The notes: a model not told the origin generated them from the letters alone. A stretch of 63,249 nt of DNA, filler included, from Octopus bimaculoides (GCF_001194135.2; 5 parts of 5 records of this genome joined end to end with filler, not necessarily neighbours in it), one strand, 5' to 3'. Positions 48,502-63,249 are shown, counted from the first letter of the whole stretch. Numbers and translations: made by a program.

Positions 48502-49010
48502 CGTACGACAATCGCCGACCTTCGATGCGAAAGACATCCCTTGGCAAATATATGTAACTTTCTCCAGTGAAATTATTCACTGATATCGAAAAAGTGAAAA
48601 CAAGCAATGTTAAATCTCTGAACGAGGTATTAACAGTAACTGCACGATAAAGTGAAGTATATTAGCCCCTCCTGGGGCTAAAAGCAACAGTAACATCCAC
48701 CCCTCGGGGTCAGCCACATTTAAGTGGCAAATATACTTCACTTTATCGTGCAGTTACTGTTAATACCTCGTTCAGAGATTTAACATTGCTTGTTTTCACT
48801 TTTTCGATATCAGTGAATAATTTCACTGGAGAAAGTTACATATATTTGCCAAGGGATGTCTTTCGCATCGAAGGTCGGCGATTGTCGTACGCTGAAGAAG
48901 GGGAATAACCCTGAAACTCGGGTACGTACGTATCGTACATCAAGATGGGAAAGATAACTTCCCTTGGCAAATACAGTCAGGGCACAGATGTGTGTCGATA
49001 GCCACACATT
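48502..49010 (+). mobile_element. Structured hammerhead-containing repeat (PLE pLTR / retrozyme-like) with a 162-bp inverted 5' arm
   Basis: 48502-48663 is the exact reverse complement of 48730-48891. 48669-48790 is homologous to 26546-26666. It contains the hammerhead above. Confidence 0.7.
48879..48935 (+). ncRNA. Type I (minimal, probably dimer-forming) hammerhead ribozyme motif
   Basis: Stem I CGAU-ugu-CGUACG / CGUACG-u-AUCG; core CUGAAGA (48892-98); stem II AGGG/CCCU with loop GAAUAA; GAAA (48913-16); stem III ACUCGGGU, self-complementary with G-U pairs; GUA cleavage triplet (48922-24). All conserved core nucleotides are present. Confidence 0.8.
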
Positions 49011-49122
49011 TTATCTATAAAGCTCAATTTAATTTTGATTTTTTATAAGTTGATTTTAATTGAGTTTTTACCTGTAATTTTGGATTTTGTCCCTAATATA
49101 TATATATATATATAATATGTAT

Positions 49123-51375
49123 TGTTGTGTCTGGAGAGAGTCATTCTCTTTTAGTGCCTTTATAATTAAAAACACTCACCGGAAAAATTTCCACTCATTT
49201 ATTTATTTATTTTTCTAAATTTTTCGTTGCATCTTGCAACCTTTTCAGTAGCTGTTGACTCTGTCCATTATTCAAGCTGCGTTCCTTTTTTTTGTGCGCA
49301 TTTGCGTGGGTCAGTGTGTCTGTATGTATGGATGTGCATCTCCGTCTGTGTGGACGTGTGTCTCCATATATGTCCTTGTGTGAAGTGTAGTATGTGTGTG
49401 TATGGTCATGTGTTTCAGTTTTCATTTGCGCATGTAAGTGTACGTGTGCTTGTCTGTTCATATTACCTATGTACCTATCCGTCTGTATATTTGTCTGTTT
49501 ACTTTCATATCCATTTGCCTACATACATGTGCATATAGATATATATATATATACACACACACATACATTCATCTTCATAACAGCCCACTAACTATTCTAT
49601 CTGTATATAAATATAAACTGTGGGTATGGGTATGATTATCTACTACGTATATTTCCTATTTAGTACTGGAGATGTTTCATTTATGAGGACGTACTCCTGT
49701 ATTTGTCTGAGTGTTGGGTCCTTTGGGTGCTTGGATAAAATTCGGATGTCAAGTTGACCCAAGTTGCCTCCATGTTGATCTATGGCATGTTGGTAGAGCA
49801 TGGAGGACTGTTTTTTGTCGTCATATTGTCTCAGATGTTCATTTAGTTTTTTCGCAATGCTCCGAGATGTCTCCCCTGTGTACGTCATGTTCATGTCTTT
49901 ACAAGCACCTTCTATGAATCTTATGCTGTAAACTACATTTCTAGTTCTACAGTTAGTGCCTGGGCTAATCCTACATACACTGCAGTTATCATTGGTGCAT
50001 ATGATATTCTCAAATCTATATTCTCACATAGTTGTGATCCGATGGAGTTCCCTGGCTTTTCAGCAATCTTAATGTTGAGTTTGGTCTCCATCAGAGCTTT
50101 CCAAAATCTACGGGCTAGTTCTCTATGGGCTGTGGCCTCTACAAACATCACTCCTTGATATTTGTCGGTTTTATACCACATGTTCACCCTGTTTGCTTTG
50201 TCACAATATCTTTGTATCCTATTCTAGTCTTTGCTCCTATATCTAGAGCAGGTACCACTGGTTTCATTACATATAATGTTATCTAACTTCTTTCTAGCAC
50301 CCCTATATACTCGAACCCTATCTTTCTGATCATATCCCGAGAATTGCATGTGGTGCATGAAGTTCTGAACATGTTTCCTCGTTTCATAGGGTTTGCATAT
50401 AAGGAACACGTTATTAATTATCCTAACTAAGTCTGCTATCAGTATGTTAATTTTCATGTTGTGTGACAAAGCTGAGTTCTTGTGAACAACATATTTCGAA
50501 GCTATGGGTTTCATGTAATAGGAATGGAGGAGCTGCACTCTGTTCACAGTCTCTAACCAAAGTTCAGTATCAAGGACGAGGAGTCTATTGTTAGGGTGCA
50601 TAGTGGGGTAATCTATAGTTACCTTGATACTTTGGTGGAAGGAATTAGCTACTTGCTGGATGCTCTTCATTATGTTCTTCTCAGTTTCTACATTACCGTC
50701 ACTAGAGTTGGTTTTAACTAGGATATTAACGTCATCTACATATCTACTATAAAGTAGAAGAGTTGTGGACTGTTCTGCTATGGATTGCTTAAGTTTTCTG
50801 TCCCACCAGATCATGAAGAGGTTGGCCACATCTCCAGCTATACCGACACCAATGGCTGCACCTCGAACCTGCATGTATAGTTTCTTGTTAAACTTTACTA
50901 TGTGATTCTTGAAGGGCTTCTTACGCTAGCCCTTATTGCATGTGCAATCATTCCTTTCACCTGATTATTATTCTCAGGGTCCTGGGTGGGTACGGTCCAG
51001 CCATTCCACCGCTCTGTAGTGCTTTTCTTCGCTGCTGAAGTGATGGTGGGTGGTCTTCCCCTCTGTGACCCGGTGGGGCAGAATCTACTGAAGTCATGTT
51101 CGTCTAAACAGATACTGTCGTAGCTTAGTCTAAGGATGAGGCCCAGTTCCCTCGTGTTGACCTTACGGAACTCTACTTCACTCTCACAGATTATCTCAAT
51201 GCGTTTCTCCACAGCAAAATGTTTGTCTGTAGATGGGTAGTGTTAAATCACATTCATGTTACCTACTACACAATCTGCAAGTACTGATTTTACTGAGATC
51301 TTCCGTGCTCACACAGAACTCTAGGAACATTTCTATGAGAGGTCGTAAAACCTGTGAGAAGAAGTAGGACAGTCT
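49123..51375 (-). mobile_element. Penelope-like retroelement copy 1: 5'-truncated, frameshifted RT + GIY-YIG endonuclease + 3' terminal region
   Basis: RT motifs VVGNMNV..YPS, QVRGAAIG and LYSRYVDD (50224-50874 ORF). The GIY-YIG part reads MTYTGETSRSIAKKLNEHLRQ (49643-49894). The 3' non-coding region is homologous to copy 2. Confidence 0.92.
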
Positions 51376-52079: not shown

Positions 52080-52223
52080 TTAGAACCTTGATTTTGGACG
52101 TCTCTCCAAATATGCGGCAATGGATGGTCGTTTAGCAACATTTTCTCGAAGATTAGCCAAATTTTGGTAGTTTTTCAGCAAATTAGGATCTTCCTGGACC
52201 GGGGATTCCAATACGATGAAACA
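52080..52223 (-). CDS. Terminal coding exon of the same GST / S-crystallin-family gene (5' end lies in the N gap)
   Basis: Translates CFIVLESPVQEDPNLLKNYQNLANLRENVAKRPSIAAYLERRPKSRF*, matching the GST-sigma C-terminus pattern (C..LE.P....P.LL..YP.L..LR..VA..P.IAAYL..RP...F*). Stop TAA at 52082-52080. Confidence 0.88.
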   Translation of the reverse strand, partial: CFIVLESPVQEDPNLLKNYQNLANLRENVAKRPSIAAYLERRPKSRF

Positions 52224-52683: not shown

Positions 52684-52740
52684 TACACGACTGCGCCTAC
52701 ACGACTGCGCCTACACGACTGCGCCTACACGACTGCGCCT
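52684..52740. repeat. 14-bp minisatellite (TACACGACTGCGCC)x4, continuing into the gap
   Basis: Read directly from the sequence. Confidence 0.95.
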
Positions 52741-52875: not shown

Positions 52876-55212
52876 CAGGTTGTGCAGTGGGTAGTATGGA
52901 TGTGATTTCACTCTACCTATCTATAGACAGATTTTGCGGTGGAGAAATGCATTCAGGTAATCTGTGAGAGTGAGGTGGAATTCTGTAAGTTCAACACGAG
53001 GGAACTGGGCCTCCTCCTCAGACTATGCTATGACAGTAACTATTTAGAAGACCATGACCTCAGTAGATTCTGCCCCACCAGGTCACAGAGGGGAAGACCA
53101 CCCACCATCACTTCAACAGTGAAGAAAATCACCAGAGAGCGGTGGAGTGGCTGTACCGCACCCACCCAAACCCTGAGAACAACAATCAGGTGAAAGAAAT
53201 GATTGCACATGCAATAAGGGCCAGTGTAAAAATAACCTTGAAAAACCACAGTAAAGTTTAACAAAAAATTATACATGCAGGTTCAAGGTGCAGCCATCGG
53301 TGCAGCTGGAGATGTGGCTGGCTTCTTCATGACTTGCTGGGCCAGAAAACTTAAACAAATGTTAGCAGAACAATCCACAACTCTTCTACTCTACAGTAGA
53401 TATGTAGATGACATTAATACCTTAGTTAGGACCAACTTTAGTGACGATAATGTAGAAACTGAGAAGAACGTAATGGAGAGCATCCAGCAAATAGCTAACT
53501 CCATCCACCAAAGTATCAAGGTAACTATAGATTACTCCACTAAGCACCCCAACAATAGACTCCCTGTACTTGATACTGAACTTTGGTTAGAGACTGTGAG
53601 CAATAGAGTGCAGCCCCTCCACTTCTATTACATGAAACCATTAACTTCAAAATATGTTGTTCACAAGAACTCAGCTTTGTCACACAACATGAAAATTAAC
53701 ATACTGATAGTAGAATAATGAACAATGTGTCCCCACTATGGGAATCCTATGAAACGAGAAAACATACAGAACTTCATGCACCGCATGCAGTTCTCTGCAT
53801 TTGATCAGAAAGATAGGGTTCGAGTATACAGGGGTGCTAGAAAGAAATTAGACAACATTATACGTAATGATACCAGTGCTACCTACCCTAGATATAGAAA
53901 CAAAGAATGAAATAGGATACAAAGAACTTGTGACAAAGCGAACACGTGGTATAAAACCGACAAATATCAAGGAGTGATGTTTGTAGAGGCCACAGCCCAT
54001 GGAGAACTAGCCCGTAGATTTAGAAAAGCTCTGAAGGAGACCAAACTCAACATAAAGATTGCTGAAAAGCCAGGGAACTCCGTCAGATCACAACTATGTA
54101 GGACGTACCCCTTTGAGAATACCATATGCACCAATGATAACTGCATGGTATGTAGGATTATCCCTGGCATTAACTGTAGAACTCGCTCGAAATATAGTTT
54201 ACCGCATAAGATGCATAGAAGGGGCTTGTAAAGACATGAACATGGCGTACATAAGTGAGACATCTAGGAGCATTGCGGAACGACTAAATGAACATCTGAG
54301 ACAATATGACGACAAAAACCAATCCTCCATACTCTACCAACATACCAAAACCACCATGGAAGCAACTTGGGTCAACTTGACATCCACATCTTATCCAAGC
54401 ACCCAAAAGACCCAACACTCAGACAAATACAGGAGCACATCCTTATAAATGAAACTTCCCCAGTACTAAATAGGAAATATACATAGTAGATATCATACCC
54501 CCATACTCACGGTTTACACAGGTAGAGTAGAATAGTTAGTGAGCTGTTATGTAGATCAATGTATGTGTTTGTGGGGGTGTATATGTGTGTGTGCACATGT
54601 ATGTAAGCATATAGATATGAAAATAAACAGATCAATATACAGACGGATAGGTACATAGGTAATATGAACAGACAAGCACACATACGCAAATGGAGACTGA
54701 AACACATGACCATATATACACACACACTTTACTTCACACAAGGACACATATGGAGACACGTGTCCACACATATGGAAATGCACACCCATACATACAAACA
54801 TGGTACATAGTTGCAAATCACACGCACGCACAGACATGCACACACAAGGGAACAGAGGTACATACATATACAAGCACACGCTCACACACACACATACAAA
54901 ATACACAAACACGGACATACAAGCACATGAATATGCAGAATACATACATACAGATGCACACATGTATACATTCATACATGCATGCATAGGCACACACACA
55001 TACAAACACACACACACTGACCCACACACATGCGCACAAACAAACAAAAAGGAACGCAGTGTAAATAACGGACAGAGACAAGACTATTGAAAAGGTTGCA
55101 AGACGCAACGATAATTTTAGGAAAATAAAAATAGGAAATAAGTGGAAATTTTACCGGTGAATGTGTTAAATTATAAGGCACAAAAATAAAATGACTCTCC
55201 CCAGACACAACA
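52876..55212 (+). mobile_element. Penelope-like retroelement copy 2: 5'-truncated, frameshifted RT + GIY-YIG + 3' terminal region; lies in the GST intron, antisense to the gene
   Basis: Motifs VGSMDVISLY, QVQGAAIG, LYSRYVDD and NIVYRIRC...AYISETSRSIAERLNEH. It is the reverse complement of copy 1 out to CCAGACACAACA (55212). Confidence 0.92.
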
Positions 55213-56408
55213 GAATATGCTTCAACACACGAACTCACATAAAGAATCTTGCAAACCAAATCCAAAAACGAAATATATATATATATATATATATATATAT
55301 CGTCATAAATATACAGGGATTAGCATTGAGTTGCTTCTCCAACATACTGAAAATTTAGAAATAGCAGTCAAAGAACTACTGATTCTAGACTACAAATTTT
55401 TCTCTAAACGGATGGCGATATTTATGGCACACATAGAACAAAAAAGCGGAGGGAAAAGCGTAAACAAAACAAGTCTTTAGTTAATTGGGTACGAATCGTT
55501 TCATGGTTAAGCGAATGAAAATTTCACTATTCCAATCTTCAGTCCAAATATTCTGATAAATTTGAAAGTGTCTCTAAAAAAATTCACGGTAATTTTTGGC
55601 CATGCGACACCATATCCAAGAAAGTTAGGGGTTGTGAATCCAACCCACTAAGGAATAATATCTATCCAATATACTGCTGGAAGAATACCCCNNNNNNNNN
55701 NNNNNNNNNNNNNNNNNNNNNNNNNNNNNNNNNNNNNNNNNNNNNNNNNNNNNNNNNNNNNNNNNNNNNNNNNNNNNNNNNNNNNNNNNNNNNNNNNNNN
55801 NNNNNNNNNNNNNNNNNNNNNNNNNNNNNNNNNNNNNNNNNNNAAAAATAGGAAATAAGTGGAAATTTTACCGGTGAATGTGTTAAATTATAAGGCACAA
55901 AAATAAAATGACTCTCCCCAGACACAACAGAATATGCTTCAACACACGAACTCACATAAAGAATCTTGCAAACCAAATCCAAAAACGAAATATATATATA
56001 TATATATATATATATATCGTCATAAATATACAGGGATTAGCATTGAGTTGCTTCTCCAACATACTGAAAATTTAGAAATAGCAGTCAAAGAACTACTGAT
56101 TCTAAACTACAATTTTTTCTTTAAACGGATGGCGATATTTATGGCACACATAGAACAAAAAAGCGGAGGGAAAAGCGTAAACAAAACAAGTCTTTAGTTA
56201 ATTGGGTACGAATCGTTTCATGGTTAAGCGAATGAAAATTTCACTATTCCAATCTTCAGTCCAAATATTCTGATAAATTTGAAAGTGTCTCTAAAAAAAT
56301 TCACGGTAATTTTTGGCCATGCGACACCATATCCAAGAAAGTTAGGGGTTGTGAATCCAACCCACTAAGGAATAATATCTATCCAATATACTGCTGGAAG
56401 AATACCCC
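55124..56408. repeat. ~565-bp near-identical tandem duplication across an N gap (55124-55691 vs 55844-56408), probable assembly or haplotype artefact
   Basis: The copies differ at only a few bases and flank the gap at 55692-55843. Confidence 0.75.
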
Positions 56409-57437
56409 ATTATTATTACATTAGTGTTTTCCCTTTGTATTACCAAGTGCAATAAATGGGTGCGGGTAAAAGGATATTTTACCCTTAATTTATATAGCAA
56501 TAAGAAAATGGAGGGGAATAGGTGGTATTCATCAACTTGCAGACATGGAATTGTGTCAATTTACCTGTTTATTTGTTAACTAAGAGGACAATAATAACAA
56601 TATACAAACGTCGCATGCATACATACATACATACATACATACATACAAACACACACACACATACATATATATAATATATGCATATATATATGTATATGTT
56701 TATAAATATATATATATATGTGTGTGTGTGTATATGTAGTTATATATATATATATATGGGCGTGTGTGTATGCATGTGTGTGTGTGTGTGTGTGTGTAAA
56801 AGTGAGTTAGAGAACAAGAGAAGGAGAAAGAGCGATACAAAGAGCGAGAAAGGGAGAGTTTGGGAGAGAGAGAGGGAGAGAGAGAAATGAACTGAGTAGT
56901 GACGGCGAGCTTGAACATCAACGATGTGATTGAGAGAAAATGCCACAGGTGAGCGTGTTTTACTGAACAGAAATACAGTAAGGTCTCATCTATGTGATAT
57001 AATGCCTGAAATATACCTGCTGCTTTCAGCTGTAAGCTTTAAAGATTAGGTTAACTCTAATATTCATTGTTTACACGGTTCAAAAATGTTAATATGCGCA
57101 TGAGACTTATTGAAGTTATCTCCTATTACTTCCTGTGTTTAAATCTTAAACATTCATAGGTGGGATTCTCTACGAATTATGTGGATAATTTTAGTTGATC
57201 GAAGTCTTTGAGCTCAAAATGTTAAATCGGTCGTTGGAAAAAGTCGTCGCTCAGATGTGTGTGAGGAACAACTTTTACCAACCACCGTTTTTTCTAAATG
57301 TCCTGATGAAGGAGTCTTCACCCCAAAATATAGAAATACAAGGTAAAACTGCATCTTTGTTTTGTTTTATTTTCCTTCTGTAATTTACTTTGTGCCTTCT
57401 CGTATTATTCCGGCCTTACACAACAATCTTCTTTAAA

Positions 57438-59117: not shown

Positions 59118-59400
59118 GTGCTACGGATGAAAGCAAAGCAACAGTTAAGGAGTGGCATATTTTACCACGACAGACACGTACACAGCATCGAATACCACGA
59201 TGTGAGTGAAAGCTGCTCTCACTGTATTGTCCGGTGTCTGGTAATCCCTTCGATACCGACATCAAACCAAAAAAAGAATCCTGACCACAGAGTGTGGGTA
59301 ATTATGTCAAAGGTCACTGGCAATGTGCATTCAGCTGATTGCAACTGTTAAAGCAAGTCACTGAGCATGCGTACATGTCATACGGGAGAGTTTCAATCAG
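59118..59400 (+). pseudogene. Fragment of a SWIM zinc-finger protein, probably transposon-derived
   Basis: Translates YHDVSESCSHCIVRCLVIPS...PDHRVWVIMSKVTGNVHSADCNC; after a 1-nt frameshift KASH*ACVHV completes a CxC...CxH motif. Confidence 0.55.
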
Positions 59401-59761
59401 GGGTGGATAACAACCTTATAGGAACCCCCTATATTTCGATGACATATCCGATACTAATTTATTCAAACGTGGTATGGTGCAATAAACATGATTATTTAAT
59501 AAAGGAAATTATACTTTATCAAAAAAAGTTCTTGAGAATACTGGAAGGAACACATCGCTCAGTACATATCAGTTCGCTTTTTCAAAGAATAAAAATAAAA
59601 ATACAAGATTTCAAATATCTTCCAAATCATTCATTACGAAAAAGCTATCATTGTTTGCTCATAAACGCTAACTTGATATGTATGCAATGACCAACTTCGA
59701 AATGAATAGTAAGGAAAATAGAAATCAGAACAAAATATTCATTGATAGGATTAAACTAAAT

Positions 59762-60832: not shown

Positions 60833-62199
60833 GTTATTATTATTATTGTTGTTGTTGTTGTTGTTGTTGTTGTTATTATTATTGTCGTTGTTATATCTGA
60901 ATAATTTCTTTTTCTGTACACCAGTTTTGTTTTATTTGATTTTTAATAAACCCAAGATGATGGTGGTACGGGGTCGAAAATTTTTTGGGGGGAAAATCAT
61001 GTAAGGGTGTCTGCACAAAGTAGTCTTTGCAGTCACGCTTCTAAGGGATCTAGCTTTTTTCATTCGCAAAATATGCATTTTTTAAAAGGAAGTAAAAAAT
61101 CTGAAAATCGGCTATAATAATGTAGTTTTTCAGTCTCATTGCTATGAAGGTGTGATGTTGTGGACAAAAAAATGGAGGAAAAATTACAGAGGTTTAAAAA
61201 TCTGAAAAACTCTGTATTTTCAGCTAATAGTGTGACAGAAATTTTGTGCGTTTAGCGGAGCGGTGTCAACTTTAAGGTTGTGCCCTGTGAAATTTATAGT
61301 TTAGCATCTGTGATAGGAACTGTTCATTGTAGGTTTCTAAATAAACAAAAATACATAATGAGATCAGCATGCATCATCTTACTGATACATAATGAGATCA
61401 GCATGCATCATCTTGTGAACCACAACACACTTTAAGTCCAAATAACATCAGATTCCTTAATTTACGAGATAAAATAATTGGTTGTACGAAATCAAAATTC
61501 AGAGTTGCATCGATACACCAAAATTGAAAGCAATCTGAGCAAAATTAAAGGTGGCTCATTTTGTAAATGAAAAAGACTAGATCTGTTCTAAGTAATAATG
61601 TGTGAACTGTGGAAGGGTTAGTATAATGAATATATTCAAAAGTAAGATTCCTACCTTCAAACTTTCCGTACAGGTTTCTAGTTGAATAAGAGCGTTCAAA
61701 ATATGCATTACACATTCTACAACTTCATCAATAACGTATTCTTCATAAACGGTTTTACCGTAGAAACCTGGTAATAGGCAAAGAAATATATGAAATAAAA
61801 ATTATTTCAAAACGTAAAAAACAGAAGTACAGGGCGGTGAGTTGAAAATTACTCTAAATCAAGTCAAATGTCTTAACTTAAAGAAATAGAAGTCACATAT
61901 CACTCAAACCACACTCCATTGTCTTAGAAAAGTATGAATTACAGCCAGCTGTTATTCTAAAGCAGATATGATCTGGTGTTGTGTGCCGTCATTTCTACTA
62001 TTGTTTTGGGCACCTAAATAGTTGCGAGCAGATATAAACATCCGCTCACCCCTCATCCTTTATATTTGATCCAAAGGATCATTATGAATGTGACAGCTGG
62101 AGGTAAACAGAGCTGCACTAGCACATGGTTCAAATACAAAACGGTTGTCCGGCCACGGAATTGGACCGACGACTTTACCAAACCACTAGGCCACGTAGA

Positions 62200-62500
62200 T
62201 CCAGCCTGAGAAAAGGACGCATTAGAAATTTACTTTGGTTGGGCCATGTACACAGGATGGACAACAACAGGCTCCCCAGACAAATCCTTTACACCCAACT
62301 GTGTAAGGGGAAAAGAGACCAGGGAAGAACTAGACTAAGATTCAAAGATACTGTAAAAAGGAACATGAAGTGGAAAGGAATTGATCATAATAAATGGCAA
62401 ACTCAAGCAAAAACCCGACCAGTATGGAGAAAGCCAACCAAGTCATGCCAAAACTATCAACAGGCATAATCGTGACGACTGACTGCAGATGATAGATAAT
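62200..62500 (+). mobile_element. 5'-truncated RTE-clade LINE 3' end
   Basis: Translates LLWLGHVHRMDNNRLPRQILYTQLCKGKRDQGRTRLRFKDTVKRNMK...W, a typical RTE ORF C-terminus. Confidence 0.88.
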
Positions 62501-63204
62501 GAGTTTTAGAGTCGAGAGTTTGCTCTTACACTTCCTCATTCCCTTCCCTTTATCTCCTTCAGCCATGTATCTCCTCTATAGCAAGATATCTGCGCTTGTC
62601 TCTCTATCATACTTTAACCTTTTGGTGCCTGGCATAAAGCCACCCACCTCCGCTTTGCCTCTCGAATACTCCTCTCTTAGCTTTTTCCTTATTCCCTGTT
62701 TTTATTTACTTATTTATTTATTTATTTTTATCTTACATGTTACACGGCAACCTAACTAGTAGCGGTAGCACGAAAAAGGCACCTAATTGTTTCCCTATGC
62801 ACAGGAAAAAGACTGAATGGTTACGGTTCGACTGCTTTTGATCACAGATCTCTTCAATCAAAGCTAACAATAAGCTTAAACAACAGCAACGTATACGACG
62901 AGAAAAGTAACAGCTACAATTTGTGTTAGAATGAGTGCCGACACATTTAATACTTGCCATATAACCTTCCTAAATAACGAATGATCGCCATGCTCTGACT
63001 CAAAACTGTAGTGCCGTCAATAATGAGTACGGGAATTGCTTTAGAAGGTATACCTATAGATAAACCACATTTTCAAGTTAATTAGAAATATAGAGGAAAC
63101 AAACAAAGGCGGTTTTATCGTTCGTCCTATATACATACACAGACATCCTAAAAGTAAATAGACACCTCTTCTTTTATATATATGTATATGTGTGTGCATA
63201 TTTG

Positions 63205-63249
<45 letters not shown>

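What the first reader, a model, noticed from the sequence alone, without database searches (positions are those of the whole stretch)
48669..49010. Intact type I hammerhead ribozyme at the tip of a long RNA rod: candidate cephalopod retrozyme
Seen: a complete hammerhead core (CUGAAGA / GAAA / GUA) with stems I and II and a short self-complementary stem III (ACUCGGGU). The flanks extend stem I: TATTTGCCAAGGGA (48843-56) pairs perfectly with TCCCTTGGCAAATA (48960-73), and 48857-69 pairs with 48944-56 with one mismatch. Established: minimal type I hammerheads with palindromic stem III occur in Penelope pLTRs and in small non-coding metazoan retrozymes that yield self-cleaving monomer and circular RNAs. 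Inference: this non-coding, highly paired repeat, about 100 bp from a PLE end, is a retrozyme-like or pLTR-derived element mobilised by PLE machinery and cleaving after A48924, possibly as a dimer.
Basis: partly seen in the sequence, partly recalled or inferred. Interest (0 to 1): 0.9.

Follow-up and report, generated by a model that had tools for sequence, protein, structure and literature searches.

The report
Solo hammerhead ribozyme beside Penelope retroelement
A real hammerhead self-cleaving RNA motif sits in a short non-coding retroelement copy inserted next to an old Penelope-like retrotransposon in what looks like a cephalopod genome; this is an expected kind of element, not a new one, and this copy is probably inert.

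Summary
The motif is there. 48886-48930 (+) holds a complete type I hammerhead: helix I CGUACG/CGUACG, CUGAAGA, 4-bp helix II, GAAA, helix III ACUCGGGU, GUA, with the cut predicted after A48924. Its flanks pair for about 31 more bp. Chance cannot explain the core plus flanks.

Three caveats. Helix II closes with A-U instead of the conserved G10.1-C11.1. Rfam calls no hammerhead here, though it also misses a clear PLE hammerhead used as a control.

Context. A decayed Penelope-like element lies tail-to-tail about 105 bp away on the minus strand. It has its own, different, decayed hammerhead about 100 nt from its 3' end. The finding's element has the same layout: cut site, 86 nt, AC-rich hairpin, then AT-rich DNA and (TA)n.

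Best reading: a solo, non-coding, PLE-mobilised hammerhead element, either retrozyme-like or pLTR-derived, with an inverted duplication made at or after insertion. Only one hammerhead is visible, so a tandem retrozyme or a circular RNA is not shown. No other copies could be retrieved, so conservation and covariation are untested.

Verdict: new member of a known kind, low to moderate interest.

The parts
48502..48669 (+). Left arm of the inverted repeat. It is the exact reverse complement of the sequence just 5' of the hammerhead core. It starts at the first base of the piece (scaffold edge).
   Evidence: 0 mismatches in 168 nt against 48674-81 plus 48732-48891; 2 mismatches in 169 nt against 48723-48891
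48670..48731 (+). Centre of the inverted repeat. It holds the 4-nt turn TCCT, GGGGCUAA (the 3' strand of a local 8-bp hairpin) and a 50-nt segment (48682-48731) present only in the right arm. The 50-nt segment folds into two small hairpins.
48732..48885 (+). Right arm, the non-coding body upstream of the hammerhead. Its 3' part (48843-48885) is also the 5' strand of the extended helix I.
48886..48930 (+). Type I hammerhead: helix I 48886-91/48925-30; CUGAAGA 48892-98; helix II 48899-48912; GAA 48913-15; helix III 48916-23; A17 at 48924. Predicted cleavage between 48924 and 48925.
48931..48973 (+). 3' strand of the extended helix I. It is an imperfect complement of 48843-48885, with an internal loop next to the 6-bp helix I where loop 1 sits in canonical type I hammerheads.
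   Evidence: (I7)
48988..49009 (+). Hairpin AUGUGUG / CACACAU with an AC-rich 3' strand. Inferred 3' end of the element and start site of reverse transcription, 64-85 nt 3' of the cut site.
   Evidence: GC falls from 45% to 21% at about 49010; analogy with PMC11167929
49011..49117 (.). AT-rich DNA (79% A+T) ending in (TA)n at 49096-49117. Inferred shared insertion target between the two retroelement 3' ends.
   Evidence: PLE target preference in PMC8557442 and PMC11167929
49118..51277 (-). Decayed, 5'-truncated Penelope-like element, copy 1. RT fragment with YVDD at 50224-50874. GIY-YIG fragment at 49643-49894. 3' end in AC-rich sequence at about 49113-49123.
49221..49248 (-). Copy 1's own decayed minimal hammerhead (CUGAAAA-G-GUUGCA AGA UGCAAC-GAAA, with G8 changed to A), about 100 nt from the element's 3' end.
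52876..55212 (+). Penelope-like element, copy 2. It is inverted relative to copy 1 and 85% identical to it. It carries a decayed hammerhead at 55086-55114 and about 60 nt of extra tail before (AT)14.

Best explanation
48674-49010 is one genomic copy of a short, non-coding retroelement that carries a hammerhead and depends on a Penelope-like element (PLE) for movement. It is either a solo pLTR-type fragment of a second PLE family or a retrozyme-like non-autonomous derivative.

Shown:
- The hammerhead has the canonical metazoan type I layout: helix I 6 bp followed by an internal loop, helix II 4 bp with a 6-nt loop, helix III 2 bp with a 4-nt nearly palindromic loop.
- The element is non-coding.
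- A decayed PLE lies tail-to-tail about 105 bp away.

Inferred:
- In a transcript the hammerhead would cut after A48924. It would do so efficiently only as a double hammerhead with a second copy, because helix III is too short in one molecule.
- The element was inserted by a PLE reverse transcriptase and GIY-YIG endonuclease. Reverse transcription would have started in the AC-rich hairpin 48988-49009, on nicked AT-rich/(TA)n DNA, the same target stretch used by the neighbouring older PLE.
- The 168-nt left arm (48502-48669) is a secondary inverted duplication made at the cDNA or DNA level, the kind of inverted structure PLE insertions often show. It is not an evolved RNA rod.
- In this copy the left arm occupies the 5' strand of helix I. 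With only one hammerhead visible, this locus is most likely an inert insertion and not a gene for a circular RNA.
For: - Complete core and three helices.
- Helix sizes of 6, 4 and 2+4 match the 'canonical' metazoan type I description in PMC4209133.
- About 31 further bp extend helix I, z = -8.6.
- The 3' partner 48925-73 keeps an internal loop beside helix I, whereas the left arm pairs perfectly. This argues that 48925-73 is the native partner and the left arm a mechanical copy.
- The neighbouring element is a PLE. It has an RT fragment with YVDD; a profile of it and its relatives hits a solved reverse transcriptase at 7e-5. A GIY-YIG fragment lies downstream in both copies.
- That PLE and its relative in L001 carry hammerheads 80-100 nt upstream of their 3' ends, which stop in AC-rich sequence abutting AT-rich DNA. 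PAc starts reverse transcription in an AC-rich stem-loop about 85-92 nt 3' of its hammerhead cut site and targets AT-rich DNA (PMC11167929). The finding's element shows the same spacing (86 nt), hairpin and composition step.
- Inverted 5'-truncated copies, and paired hammerheads on opposite strands 100-700 bp apart, are described for PLEs (PMC8557442; PMC4209133). L001 also shows a head-to-head PLE pair.
- The double hammerhead is 14.7 kcal/mol better than two monomeric hammerhead folds.
- With the left arm present, helix I has probability 0 in the ensemble.
Against: - No second copy of the element could be found. Its boundaries, family membership, and conservation or covariation of the helices are therefore untested.
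- The 3' end at about 49010 rests on composition and analogy alone.
- Rfam reports no hammerhead. The control with an intact PLE hammerhead also fails, which weakens this negative.
- The A-U closing pair of helix II departs from the 'highly conserved G10.1-C11.1' (PMC4209133).
- A competing fold (CUGA with UCGG, plus a shifted helix I) is 8.6 kcal/mol more stable than the monomeric hammerhead fold.
- The scaffold begins exactly at the outer edge of the inverted repeat. This suggests the repeat ends there. A simple twin inverted insertion, which should continue into a reverse-complement hammerhead, does not predict that.
- The 50-nt segment found in only one arm is not explained by simple snap-back copying.
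Confidence: 0.55

Rival explanations
1. It is a true tandem non-LTR retrozyme. The 423 nt from 48502 to 48924 would be one full cut-to-cut unit: 5' arm, tip, 3' arm, hammerhead. The array would continue to the left, beyond the scaffold edge, and 48925-49010 would be a diverged, truncated last unit. Transcripts would self-cleave at successive hammerheads and the monomer would be ligated into a circle of about 423 nt.
For: - The piece starts at CGUACG, exactly the position equivalent to the first base after the cut site. That is where a repeat-induced assembly break would be expected.
- 48925-48973 resembles 48502-48550 (score 35, 0 of 2000 shuffles reach it).
- The unit length and 41% GC are close to the metazoan retrozyme description of about 170-400 nt and under 45-50% GC (PMC7229834).
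- The hammerhead has the canonical type I layout typical of retrozymes, not of PLE minimal hammerheads.
Against: - Only one hammerhead and no tandem repeat are visible.
- The similarity of 48925-73 to 48502-50 is explained by both being complements of 48843-91. It is patchy (6/6, then none, then 27/30) and stops at 48973.
- A perfectly paired 168-bp arm would abolish the internal loop next to helix I.
- Known retrozyme rods are imperfect (own knowledge).
Confidence: 0.2
2. The left arm (48502-48669) is an assembly artefact at the scaffold end, such as a fold-back or chimeric join. Only 48674-49010 would be real. The hammerhead module stands, but the long 'rod' does not exist in the genome.
For: - The arm is a 0-mismatch copy lying at the very first bases of a gapped, short-read-style scaffold.
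- PLE structures are known to upset whole-genome shotgun assemblies (PMC8557442).
Against: The two arms are not symmetric. A 50-nt segment is present in one arm only, and the turn falls at a native-looking 8-bp hairpin. A simple fold-back copy of the adjacent DNA would include the 50 nt in both arms.
Confidence: 0.1
3. It is a chance hammerhead-like motif inside an unrelated fold-back or MITE-like inverted repeat, with no ribozyme ancestry and no link to PLEs.
For: - Relaxed hammerhead descriptors hit about 900 times per Gb of random sequence.
- Rfam finds nothing.
- Helix II has a non-consensus closing pair.
Against: - With the observed helix lengths there were 0 hits in 40 Mb.
- The core sits exactly at the apex of a separate, imperfect hairpin of about 37 bp formed with 48925-73, and has an internal loop in the canonical place.
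- Helix III is nearly self-complementary.
- The spacing to an AC-rich hairpin and AT-rich DNA copies the PLE layout, next to a PLE 3' end.
Confidence: 0.05

Closest known systems
Canonical type I hammerheads of metazoan non-LTR retrozymes (Cervera & de la Pena 2020, PMC7229834; newt satellite 2 and Schistosoma Sm-alpha type)
   Same: Open helix I of 6 bp followed by an internal loop. Helix II of 4 bp with a 6-nt loop. Helix III of 2 bp with a 4-nt nearly palindromic loop, which implies action as a dimer. Non-coding, low GC (41%), strongly self-paired flanks.
   Different: Only one hammerhead is visible and there is no tandem array. Helix II closes with A-U instead of G-C. N7 is A and H17 is A. 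The upstream arm is a perfect 168-nt inverted duplication, not an imperfect rod. No expression or circle data.
Minimal hammerheads in the pLTRs of Penelope-like elements (Cervera & de la Pena 2014, PMC4209133)
   Same: Lies next to a PLE. Appears as a single dispersed motif, as most PLE-derived hammerheads do. The element ends about 86 nt 3' of the cut site at AT-rich DNA. An inverted duplication is associated with it.
   Different: It is not in a repeat flanking an RT-EN ORF, and it is on the opposite strand to the adjacent PLE. It has a real helix III and a short 4-bp helix II. The adjacent PLE family and its L001 relative have the typical minimal form: a 6-bp helix II, a bulged G after A9 and no helix III loop.
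Poseidon PAc of Anolis carolinensis (Mob DNA 2024, PMC11167929)
   Same: Order and spacing: hammerhead cut site, then roughly 85-92 nt, then an AC-rich stem-loop where reverse transcription starts, then joining to AT-rich target DNA. Hammerhead activity is weak without help.
   Different: PAc is an autonomous element whose ORF starts inside the hammerhead. No ORF is attached here. The start site here is inferred from sequence only.

Membership tests
Hammerhead ribozyme, type I | Conserved core: C3 U4 G5 A6 N7 G8 A9, G12 A13 A14, A15.1-U16.1, H17 not G | tested here: met
   CUGAAGA 48892-98, GAA 48913-15, A48916-U48923, A48924
Hammerhead ribozyme, type I | Three helices around the core, with helices II and III closed by loops and helix I open | tested here: met
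   Helix I 6 bp, helix II 4 bp, helix III 2 bp plus a 4-nt loop
Hammerhead ribozyme, type I | G10.1-C11.1 closing pair of helix II (highly conserved, PMC4209133) | tested here: not met
   The closing pair is A48899-U48912, and G-C is the next pair in. It can equally be read as the usual extra nucleotide after A9 plus an extra U before G12.
Hammerhead ribozyme, type I | Score above the gathering threshold of an Rfam hammerhead covariance model | tested here: not met
   No hammerhead family at E<=10 on 14.7 kb, 141 nt or 60 nt. In the control, the intact PLE hammerhead of L001 gets only 16.2 bits from RAGATH-1-hammerhead against a threshold of 56.3, so the test is insensitive for this class.
Hammerhead ribozyme, type I | Helices conserved and covarying among homologous copies | not testable with these tools
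   No other copy in the piece, in the metagenome contigs or among predicted proteins via a pseudo-ORF. No eukaryotic genome collection was available.
Hammerhead ribozyme, type I | Mg-dependent self-cleavage at H17 | not testable with these tools
   Needs in vitro transcription. Energy models put the monomeric active fold 8.6 kcal/mol above the MFE, and the double hammerhead within 2.5-5 kcal/mol of the best alternatives.
Metazoan non-LTR retrozyme | Head-to-tail tandem units of about 170-400 bp, each with a type I hammerhead | tested here: inconclusive
   One hammerhead only and no tandem repeat in the visible sequence. The left neighbour is cut off by the scaffold edge exactly at a unit-like boundary.
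Metazoan non-LTR retrozyme | Non-coding, low GC (under about 45-50%) | tested here: met
   41% GC. No Pfam hit or PLE-like coding similarity.
Metazoan non-LTR retrozyme | Expressed as self-cleaved linear and circular RNA | not testable with these tools
   No transcriptome data available.
PLE pLTR hammerhead | Hammerhead lies in repeats flanking an RT/GIY-YIG ORF, in the same orientation | tested here: not met
   The hammerhead is on the + strand and the adjacent PLE on the - strand. The element is absent from the flank of copy 2. No ORF is attached.
PLE pLTR hammerhead | Insertion ends about 80-100 nt 3' of the cut site, in AC-rich sequence or a stem-loop, joined to AT-rich DNA | tested here: inconclusive
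   The spacing of 86 nt, the hairpin at 48988-49009 and the GC step from 45% to 21% fit and match copy 1, copy 2, L001 and PAc. The true end cannot be fixed without a second copy.

The most novel reading that the evidence does not exclude
The 423-nt cut-to-cut stretch 48502-48924 is a functional unit of a retrozyme variant. Its RNA would be an almost perfect 168-bp double-stranded hairpin trimmed by a hammerhead. That would be a natural 'long hairpin plus ribozyme' cassette, yielding defined dsRNA or circles that feed Dicer or ADAR pathways in a cephalopod, for example to silence the element family.
Probability: 0.06. Interest if true: 0.65.

Novelty: new member of a known kind. Interest (0 to 1): 0.3.

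Why it matters
Hammerheads in PLE repeats and in small retrozymes are well documented across animals, including molluscs. The literature I could search describes PLEs in cephalopods, but the papers I checked do not mention cephalopod hammerheads or retrozymes. This locus therefore extends a known class to another lineage.

Its modest added value is the arrangement. Two hammerhead-bearing elements with different hammerhead architectures are inserted tail-to-tail in one AT-rich/(TA)n stretch, and both have the same spacing from cut site to 3' end. This fits the recent view that animal retrozymes are non-autonomous passengers of PLE machinery (bioRxiv 10.64898/2026.07.22.740005).

If the family turned out to be abundant and expressed, it would give a cephalopod source of ribozyme-processed RNAs. 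The perfect 168-bp hairpin would then be worth checking for siRNA production or A-to-I editing.

Tried and rejected
- Rfam cmscan at three scales found no hammerhead. I ran a control on an intact PLE hammerhead, and Rfam missed that too. The miRNA-family hits in the piece are microsatellite artefacts.
- A scan of metagenome contigs for the core-plus-helix II pattern gave 8 hits. All were unrelated chance matches with no homology to the element.
- A protein-database search with the 65-aa pseudo-ORF that covers the hammerhead found nothing. The exact look-up of the RT ORF also found nothing. The source genome seems absent from these collections; the best RT relatives are only about 50% identical.
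- Coding potential upstream of the hammerhead: none by tblastx against the PLE copies and L001, and none by Pfam.
- tRNA or SINE origin: no tRNA-like gene.
- I tested whether the central segment (48662-48731) is homologous to the 3' tail (48974-49030), which would make a partial tandem. It is not significant: 89-262 of 2000 shuffles do as well.
- I considered a 240-nt permuted unit bounded by UGGCAAAUA at 48725 and 48965. It rests on a 9-nt repeat and weak pairing, so I dropped it.
- I rejected the idea that the element is the pLTR of the adjacent PLE. It is on the opposite strand, it has no counterpart beside copy 2, and that PLE has its own, different hammerhead.

Full report

Yes. Reading the sequence and scanning with my own hammerhead descriptor give one hit in the 14.7-kb piece, on the + strand:

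- helix I CGUACG 48886-91 with CGUACG 48925-30
- CUGAAGA 48892-98
- helix II AGGG/CCCU with loop GAAUAA, 48899-48912
- GAA 48913-15
- helix III ACUCGGGU 48916-23
- A17 at 48924

The flank pairing is also real. 48843-56 pairs perfectly with 48960-73. 48857-69 pairs with 48944-56 with one mismatch and one G.U. 48879-82 pairs with 48932-35. The 131-nt stretch folds with z = -8.6.

On chance: a relaxed descriptor is expected 0.003 times in the piece but about 900 times per Gb. With the observed helix lengths I saw 0 hits in 40 Mb of random sequence. The bare core would occur by chance somewhere in a large genome. The same core at the apex of a roughly 37-bp hairpin, with an internal loop where canonical type I hammerheads have loop 1, would not.

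**2. Caveats on 'intact'**

- Helix II closes with A-U. The PLE and metazoan hammerhead literature stresses a highly conserved G10.1-C11.1 (PMC4209133). From my own knowledge of mutational work I expect this to lower activity, not necessarily abolish it.
- Rfam 15 reports no hammerhead family at any scale. As a control I ran the same search on an intact PLE hammerhead that is conserved in three copies of locus L001. It too gets only a sub-threshold RAGATH-1-hammerhead hit of 16.2 bits. The negative is therefore weak evidence.
- In nearest-neighbour energies the monomeric hammerhead fold (-53.9 kcal/mol) loses to a fold that pairs CUGA with UCGG and shifts helix I by four bases (-62.5 kcal/mol).
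- The domain-swapped double hammerhead, with an 8-bp helix III, scores -122.5 kcal/mol. Two monomeric hammerhead folds score -107.8 and two inactive monomers -125.0.

**3.

48502-48670 and 48723-48891 form a 169-nt inverted repeat with two mismatches. Realigned, 48502-48669 is complementary without any mismatch to 48674-81 plus 48732-48891. That alignment has a 4-nt turn (TCCT) and a 50-nt segment (48682-48731) present only in the right arm.

The outer edge of this repeat is the first base of the piece. On the other side it is the last base before the hammerhead core. In a transcript that includes the left arm, the 5' strand of helix I is paired to 48502-07 with probability about 1, and helix I has probability 0.

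The 3' partner 48925-73 resembles the left arm only because both complement 48843-91. The resemblance is patchy and it preserves an internal loop next to helix I. I therefore take 48925-73 to be the native helix I strand and the left arm to be a mechanical copy.

**4. Surroundings**

- 49118-51277 (-) and 52876-55212 (+) are two 85%-identical, 5'-truncated, frameshifted copies of a Penelope-like element (PLE) in head-to-head orientation.
- Each copy has an RT fragment with YVDD. A profile built from it and its relatives hits a solved reverse transcriptase at 7e-5, and RVT_1 matches weakly.
- Each copy has a GIY-YIG fragment downstream, at E = 4e-4 and 2e-3, just under the Pfam cut-off.
- The 3' end of copy 1 faces the finding's element across about 105 bp of AT-rich DNA that ends in (TA)n.
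- A GST-sigma/S-crystallin-like last exon at 52080-52223 (-) best matches squid GST and Octopus S-crystallin in the PDB. This fits a cephalopod source.

**5. The neighbour has its own hammerhead**

A relaxed core scan finds CUGAAAA-G-GUUGCA AGA UGCAAC-GAAA at 49248-49221 (-), with a more decayed version in copy 2 at 55086-55114. This aligns with intact minimal hammerheads in a related PLE from another organism (L001): CUGAAGA-G-GCCGCC GAAG GGCGGU-GAAA AUUU|UGAG. In L001 it is present three times, two of them 3.5 kb apart flanking the ORFs. Helix II is fully different in sequence yet still paired.

These are the classic PLE minimal hammerheads: a long helix II, a bulged base after A9 and no helix III loop. 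The finding's hammerhead is of the other, 'canonical type I' architecture (PMC4209133). The finding's element is on the opposite strand and has no counterpart beside copy 2. It is therefore not the pLTR of this PLE.

**6. Shared layout**

- Copy 1, copy 2 and the L001 copy all end 80-100 nt 3' of their hammerhead cut site, in AC-rich sequence that abuts AT-rich DNA. Copy 2 has about 60 nt of extra 'tail'.
- The biochemistry of the Anolis PLE PAc shows reverse transcription starting in an AC-rich stem-loop about 85-92 nt 3' of the hammerhead cut site, on nicked AT-rich DNA (PMC11167929).
- In the finding's element the hairpin AUGUGUG/CACACAU (48988-49009) ends 85 nt after the cut site, and GC drops from 45% to 21% at about 49010.

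By inference, the element ends there and was inserted by PLE machinery into the same AT-rich/(TA)n stretch as the older PLE.

**7. The inverted arm**

PLE insertions often carry an adjacent inverted 5'-truncated copy. Paired hammerheads on opposite strands 100-700 bp apart have been described (PMC8557442; PMC4209133). PAc extends both strands of the target. L001 shows a head-to-head pair. An inverted duplication made at insertion is therefore the simplest origin of the left arm.

Two things do not fit neatly:

- The 50-nt segment is present in one arm only.
- The scaffold begins exactly at the outer edge of the repeat. The piece looks like a whole scaffold: it contains N gaps and its right end lies in a (TA)n run. 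A start exactly at the repeat edge suggests an assembly-graph fork there. That would mean the repeat does not continue into a reverse-complement hammerhead.

What lies to the left (a same-sense hammerhead, unrelated DNA, or nothing real) cannot be seen. This keeps the tandem-retrozyme reading and the assembly-artefact reading alive.

**8. Comparison and verdict**

- The hammerhead works like the canonical type I hammerheads of metazoan retrozymes, and the insertion looks PLE-mediated.
- Membership as a retrozyme is not shown: no tandem units and no RNA data.
- Membership as a PLE pLTR fails on orientation and on the absence of an ORF.
[quoted passage not shown] The two labels may therefore be ends of one continuum.
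- PLEs are abundant in cephalopods (PMC8967140, PMC13282606). The cephalopod repeat papers and retrozyme papers I checked do not mention cephalopod hammerheads.

I rate this a new member of a known kind, of low to moderate interest. This particular copy is probably inert. No copies could be retrieved to test conservation or covariation. That test remains the decisive missing one.

Noticed in passing
window 49221-49248 (-) and 55086-55114 (+); L001 7483-7510 (+), 3562-3589 (-), 52-77 (-): The neighbouring PLE family carries its own minimal hammerhead. It is decayed in both window copies (G8 changed to A in copy 1; core and GAAA mutated in copy 2). It is intact in a related PLE from another organism, where helix II has a fully different sequence but still pairs.
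   Followed up: yes
window 49118-51277 (-) and 52876-55212 (+): Two 85%-identical, 5'-truncated PLE copies lie head-to-head around an N gap. L001 shows the same head-to-head arrangement together with a pLTR-ORF-pLTR unit of 3.5 kb.
   Followed up: partly
window 55213-55300: Copy 2 extends about 60 nt beyond the 3' end it shares with copy 1. The extra stretch is AC-rich and precedes (AT)14. It looks like the optional PLE 'tail' that results from a second reverse-transcription start site.
   Followed up: partly
window 52080-52223 (-): Last-exon-like fragment of a sigma-class GST / S-crystallin (Pfam GST_C_3 at 3e-6; best PDB hits squid GST 1gsq and Octopus S-crystallin 5b7c). It lies between the two PLE copies at the edge of an N gap and supports a cephalopod origin.
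   Followed up: partly
window 55127-55691 and 55844-56408: A 565-nt stretch is repeated at 99.5% identity directly across the N gap 55692-55843. It is probably an unmerged contig overlap from scaffolding, though a real 717-bp tandem duplication is possible.
   Followed up: partly
window 52684-52740: Perfect 14-nt x 4.1 tandem repeat (TACACGACTGCGCC) immediately after an N gap.
   Followed up: no
window 59118-59690 (+) and 62125-62469 (+): ORF fragments that look, from my own knowledge, like the C-terminal part of non-LTR (LINE) ORF2 proteins. The two fragments scanned (59367-59690 and 62125-62469) have no Pfam hit.
   Followed up: no
window 56610-56736, 63176-63248, 49516-49572 and others: Sub-threshold Rfam hits to mir-3149, mir-297 and similar families all fall on TA/TG microsatellites. 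They are artefacts.
   Followed up: yes
window 48922-48931: The GUACGUACGU run around the cut site allows helix I to slip by four bases. Combined with CUGA:UCGG pairing, this gives an inactive fold predicted to be 8.6 kcal/mol more stable than the monomeric hammerhead fold. It could act as a conformational switch or be an accident.
   Followed up: partly
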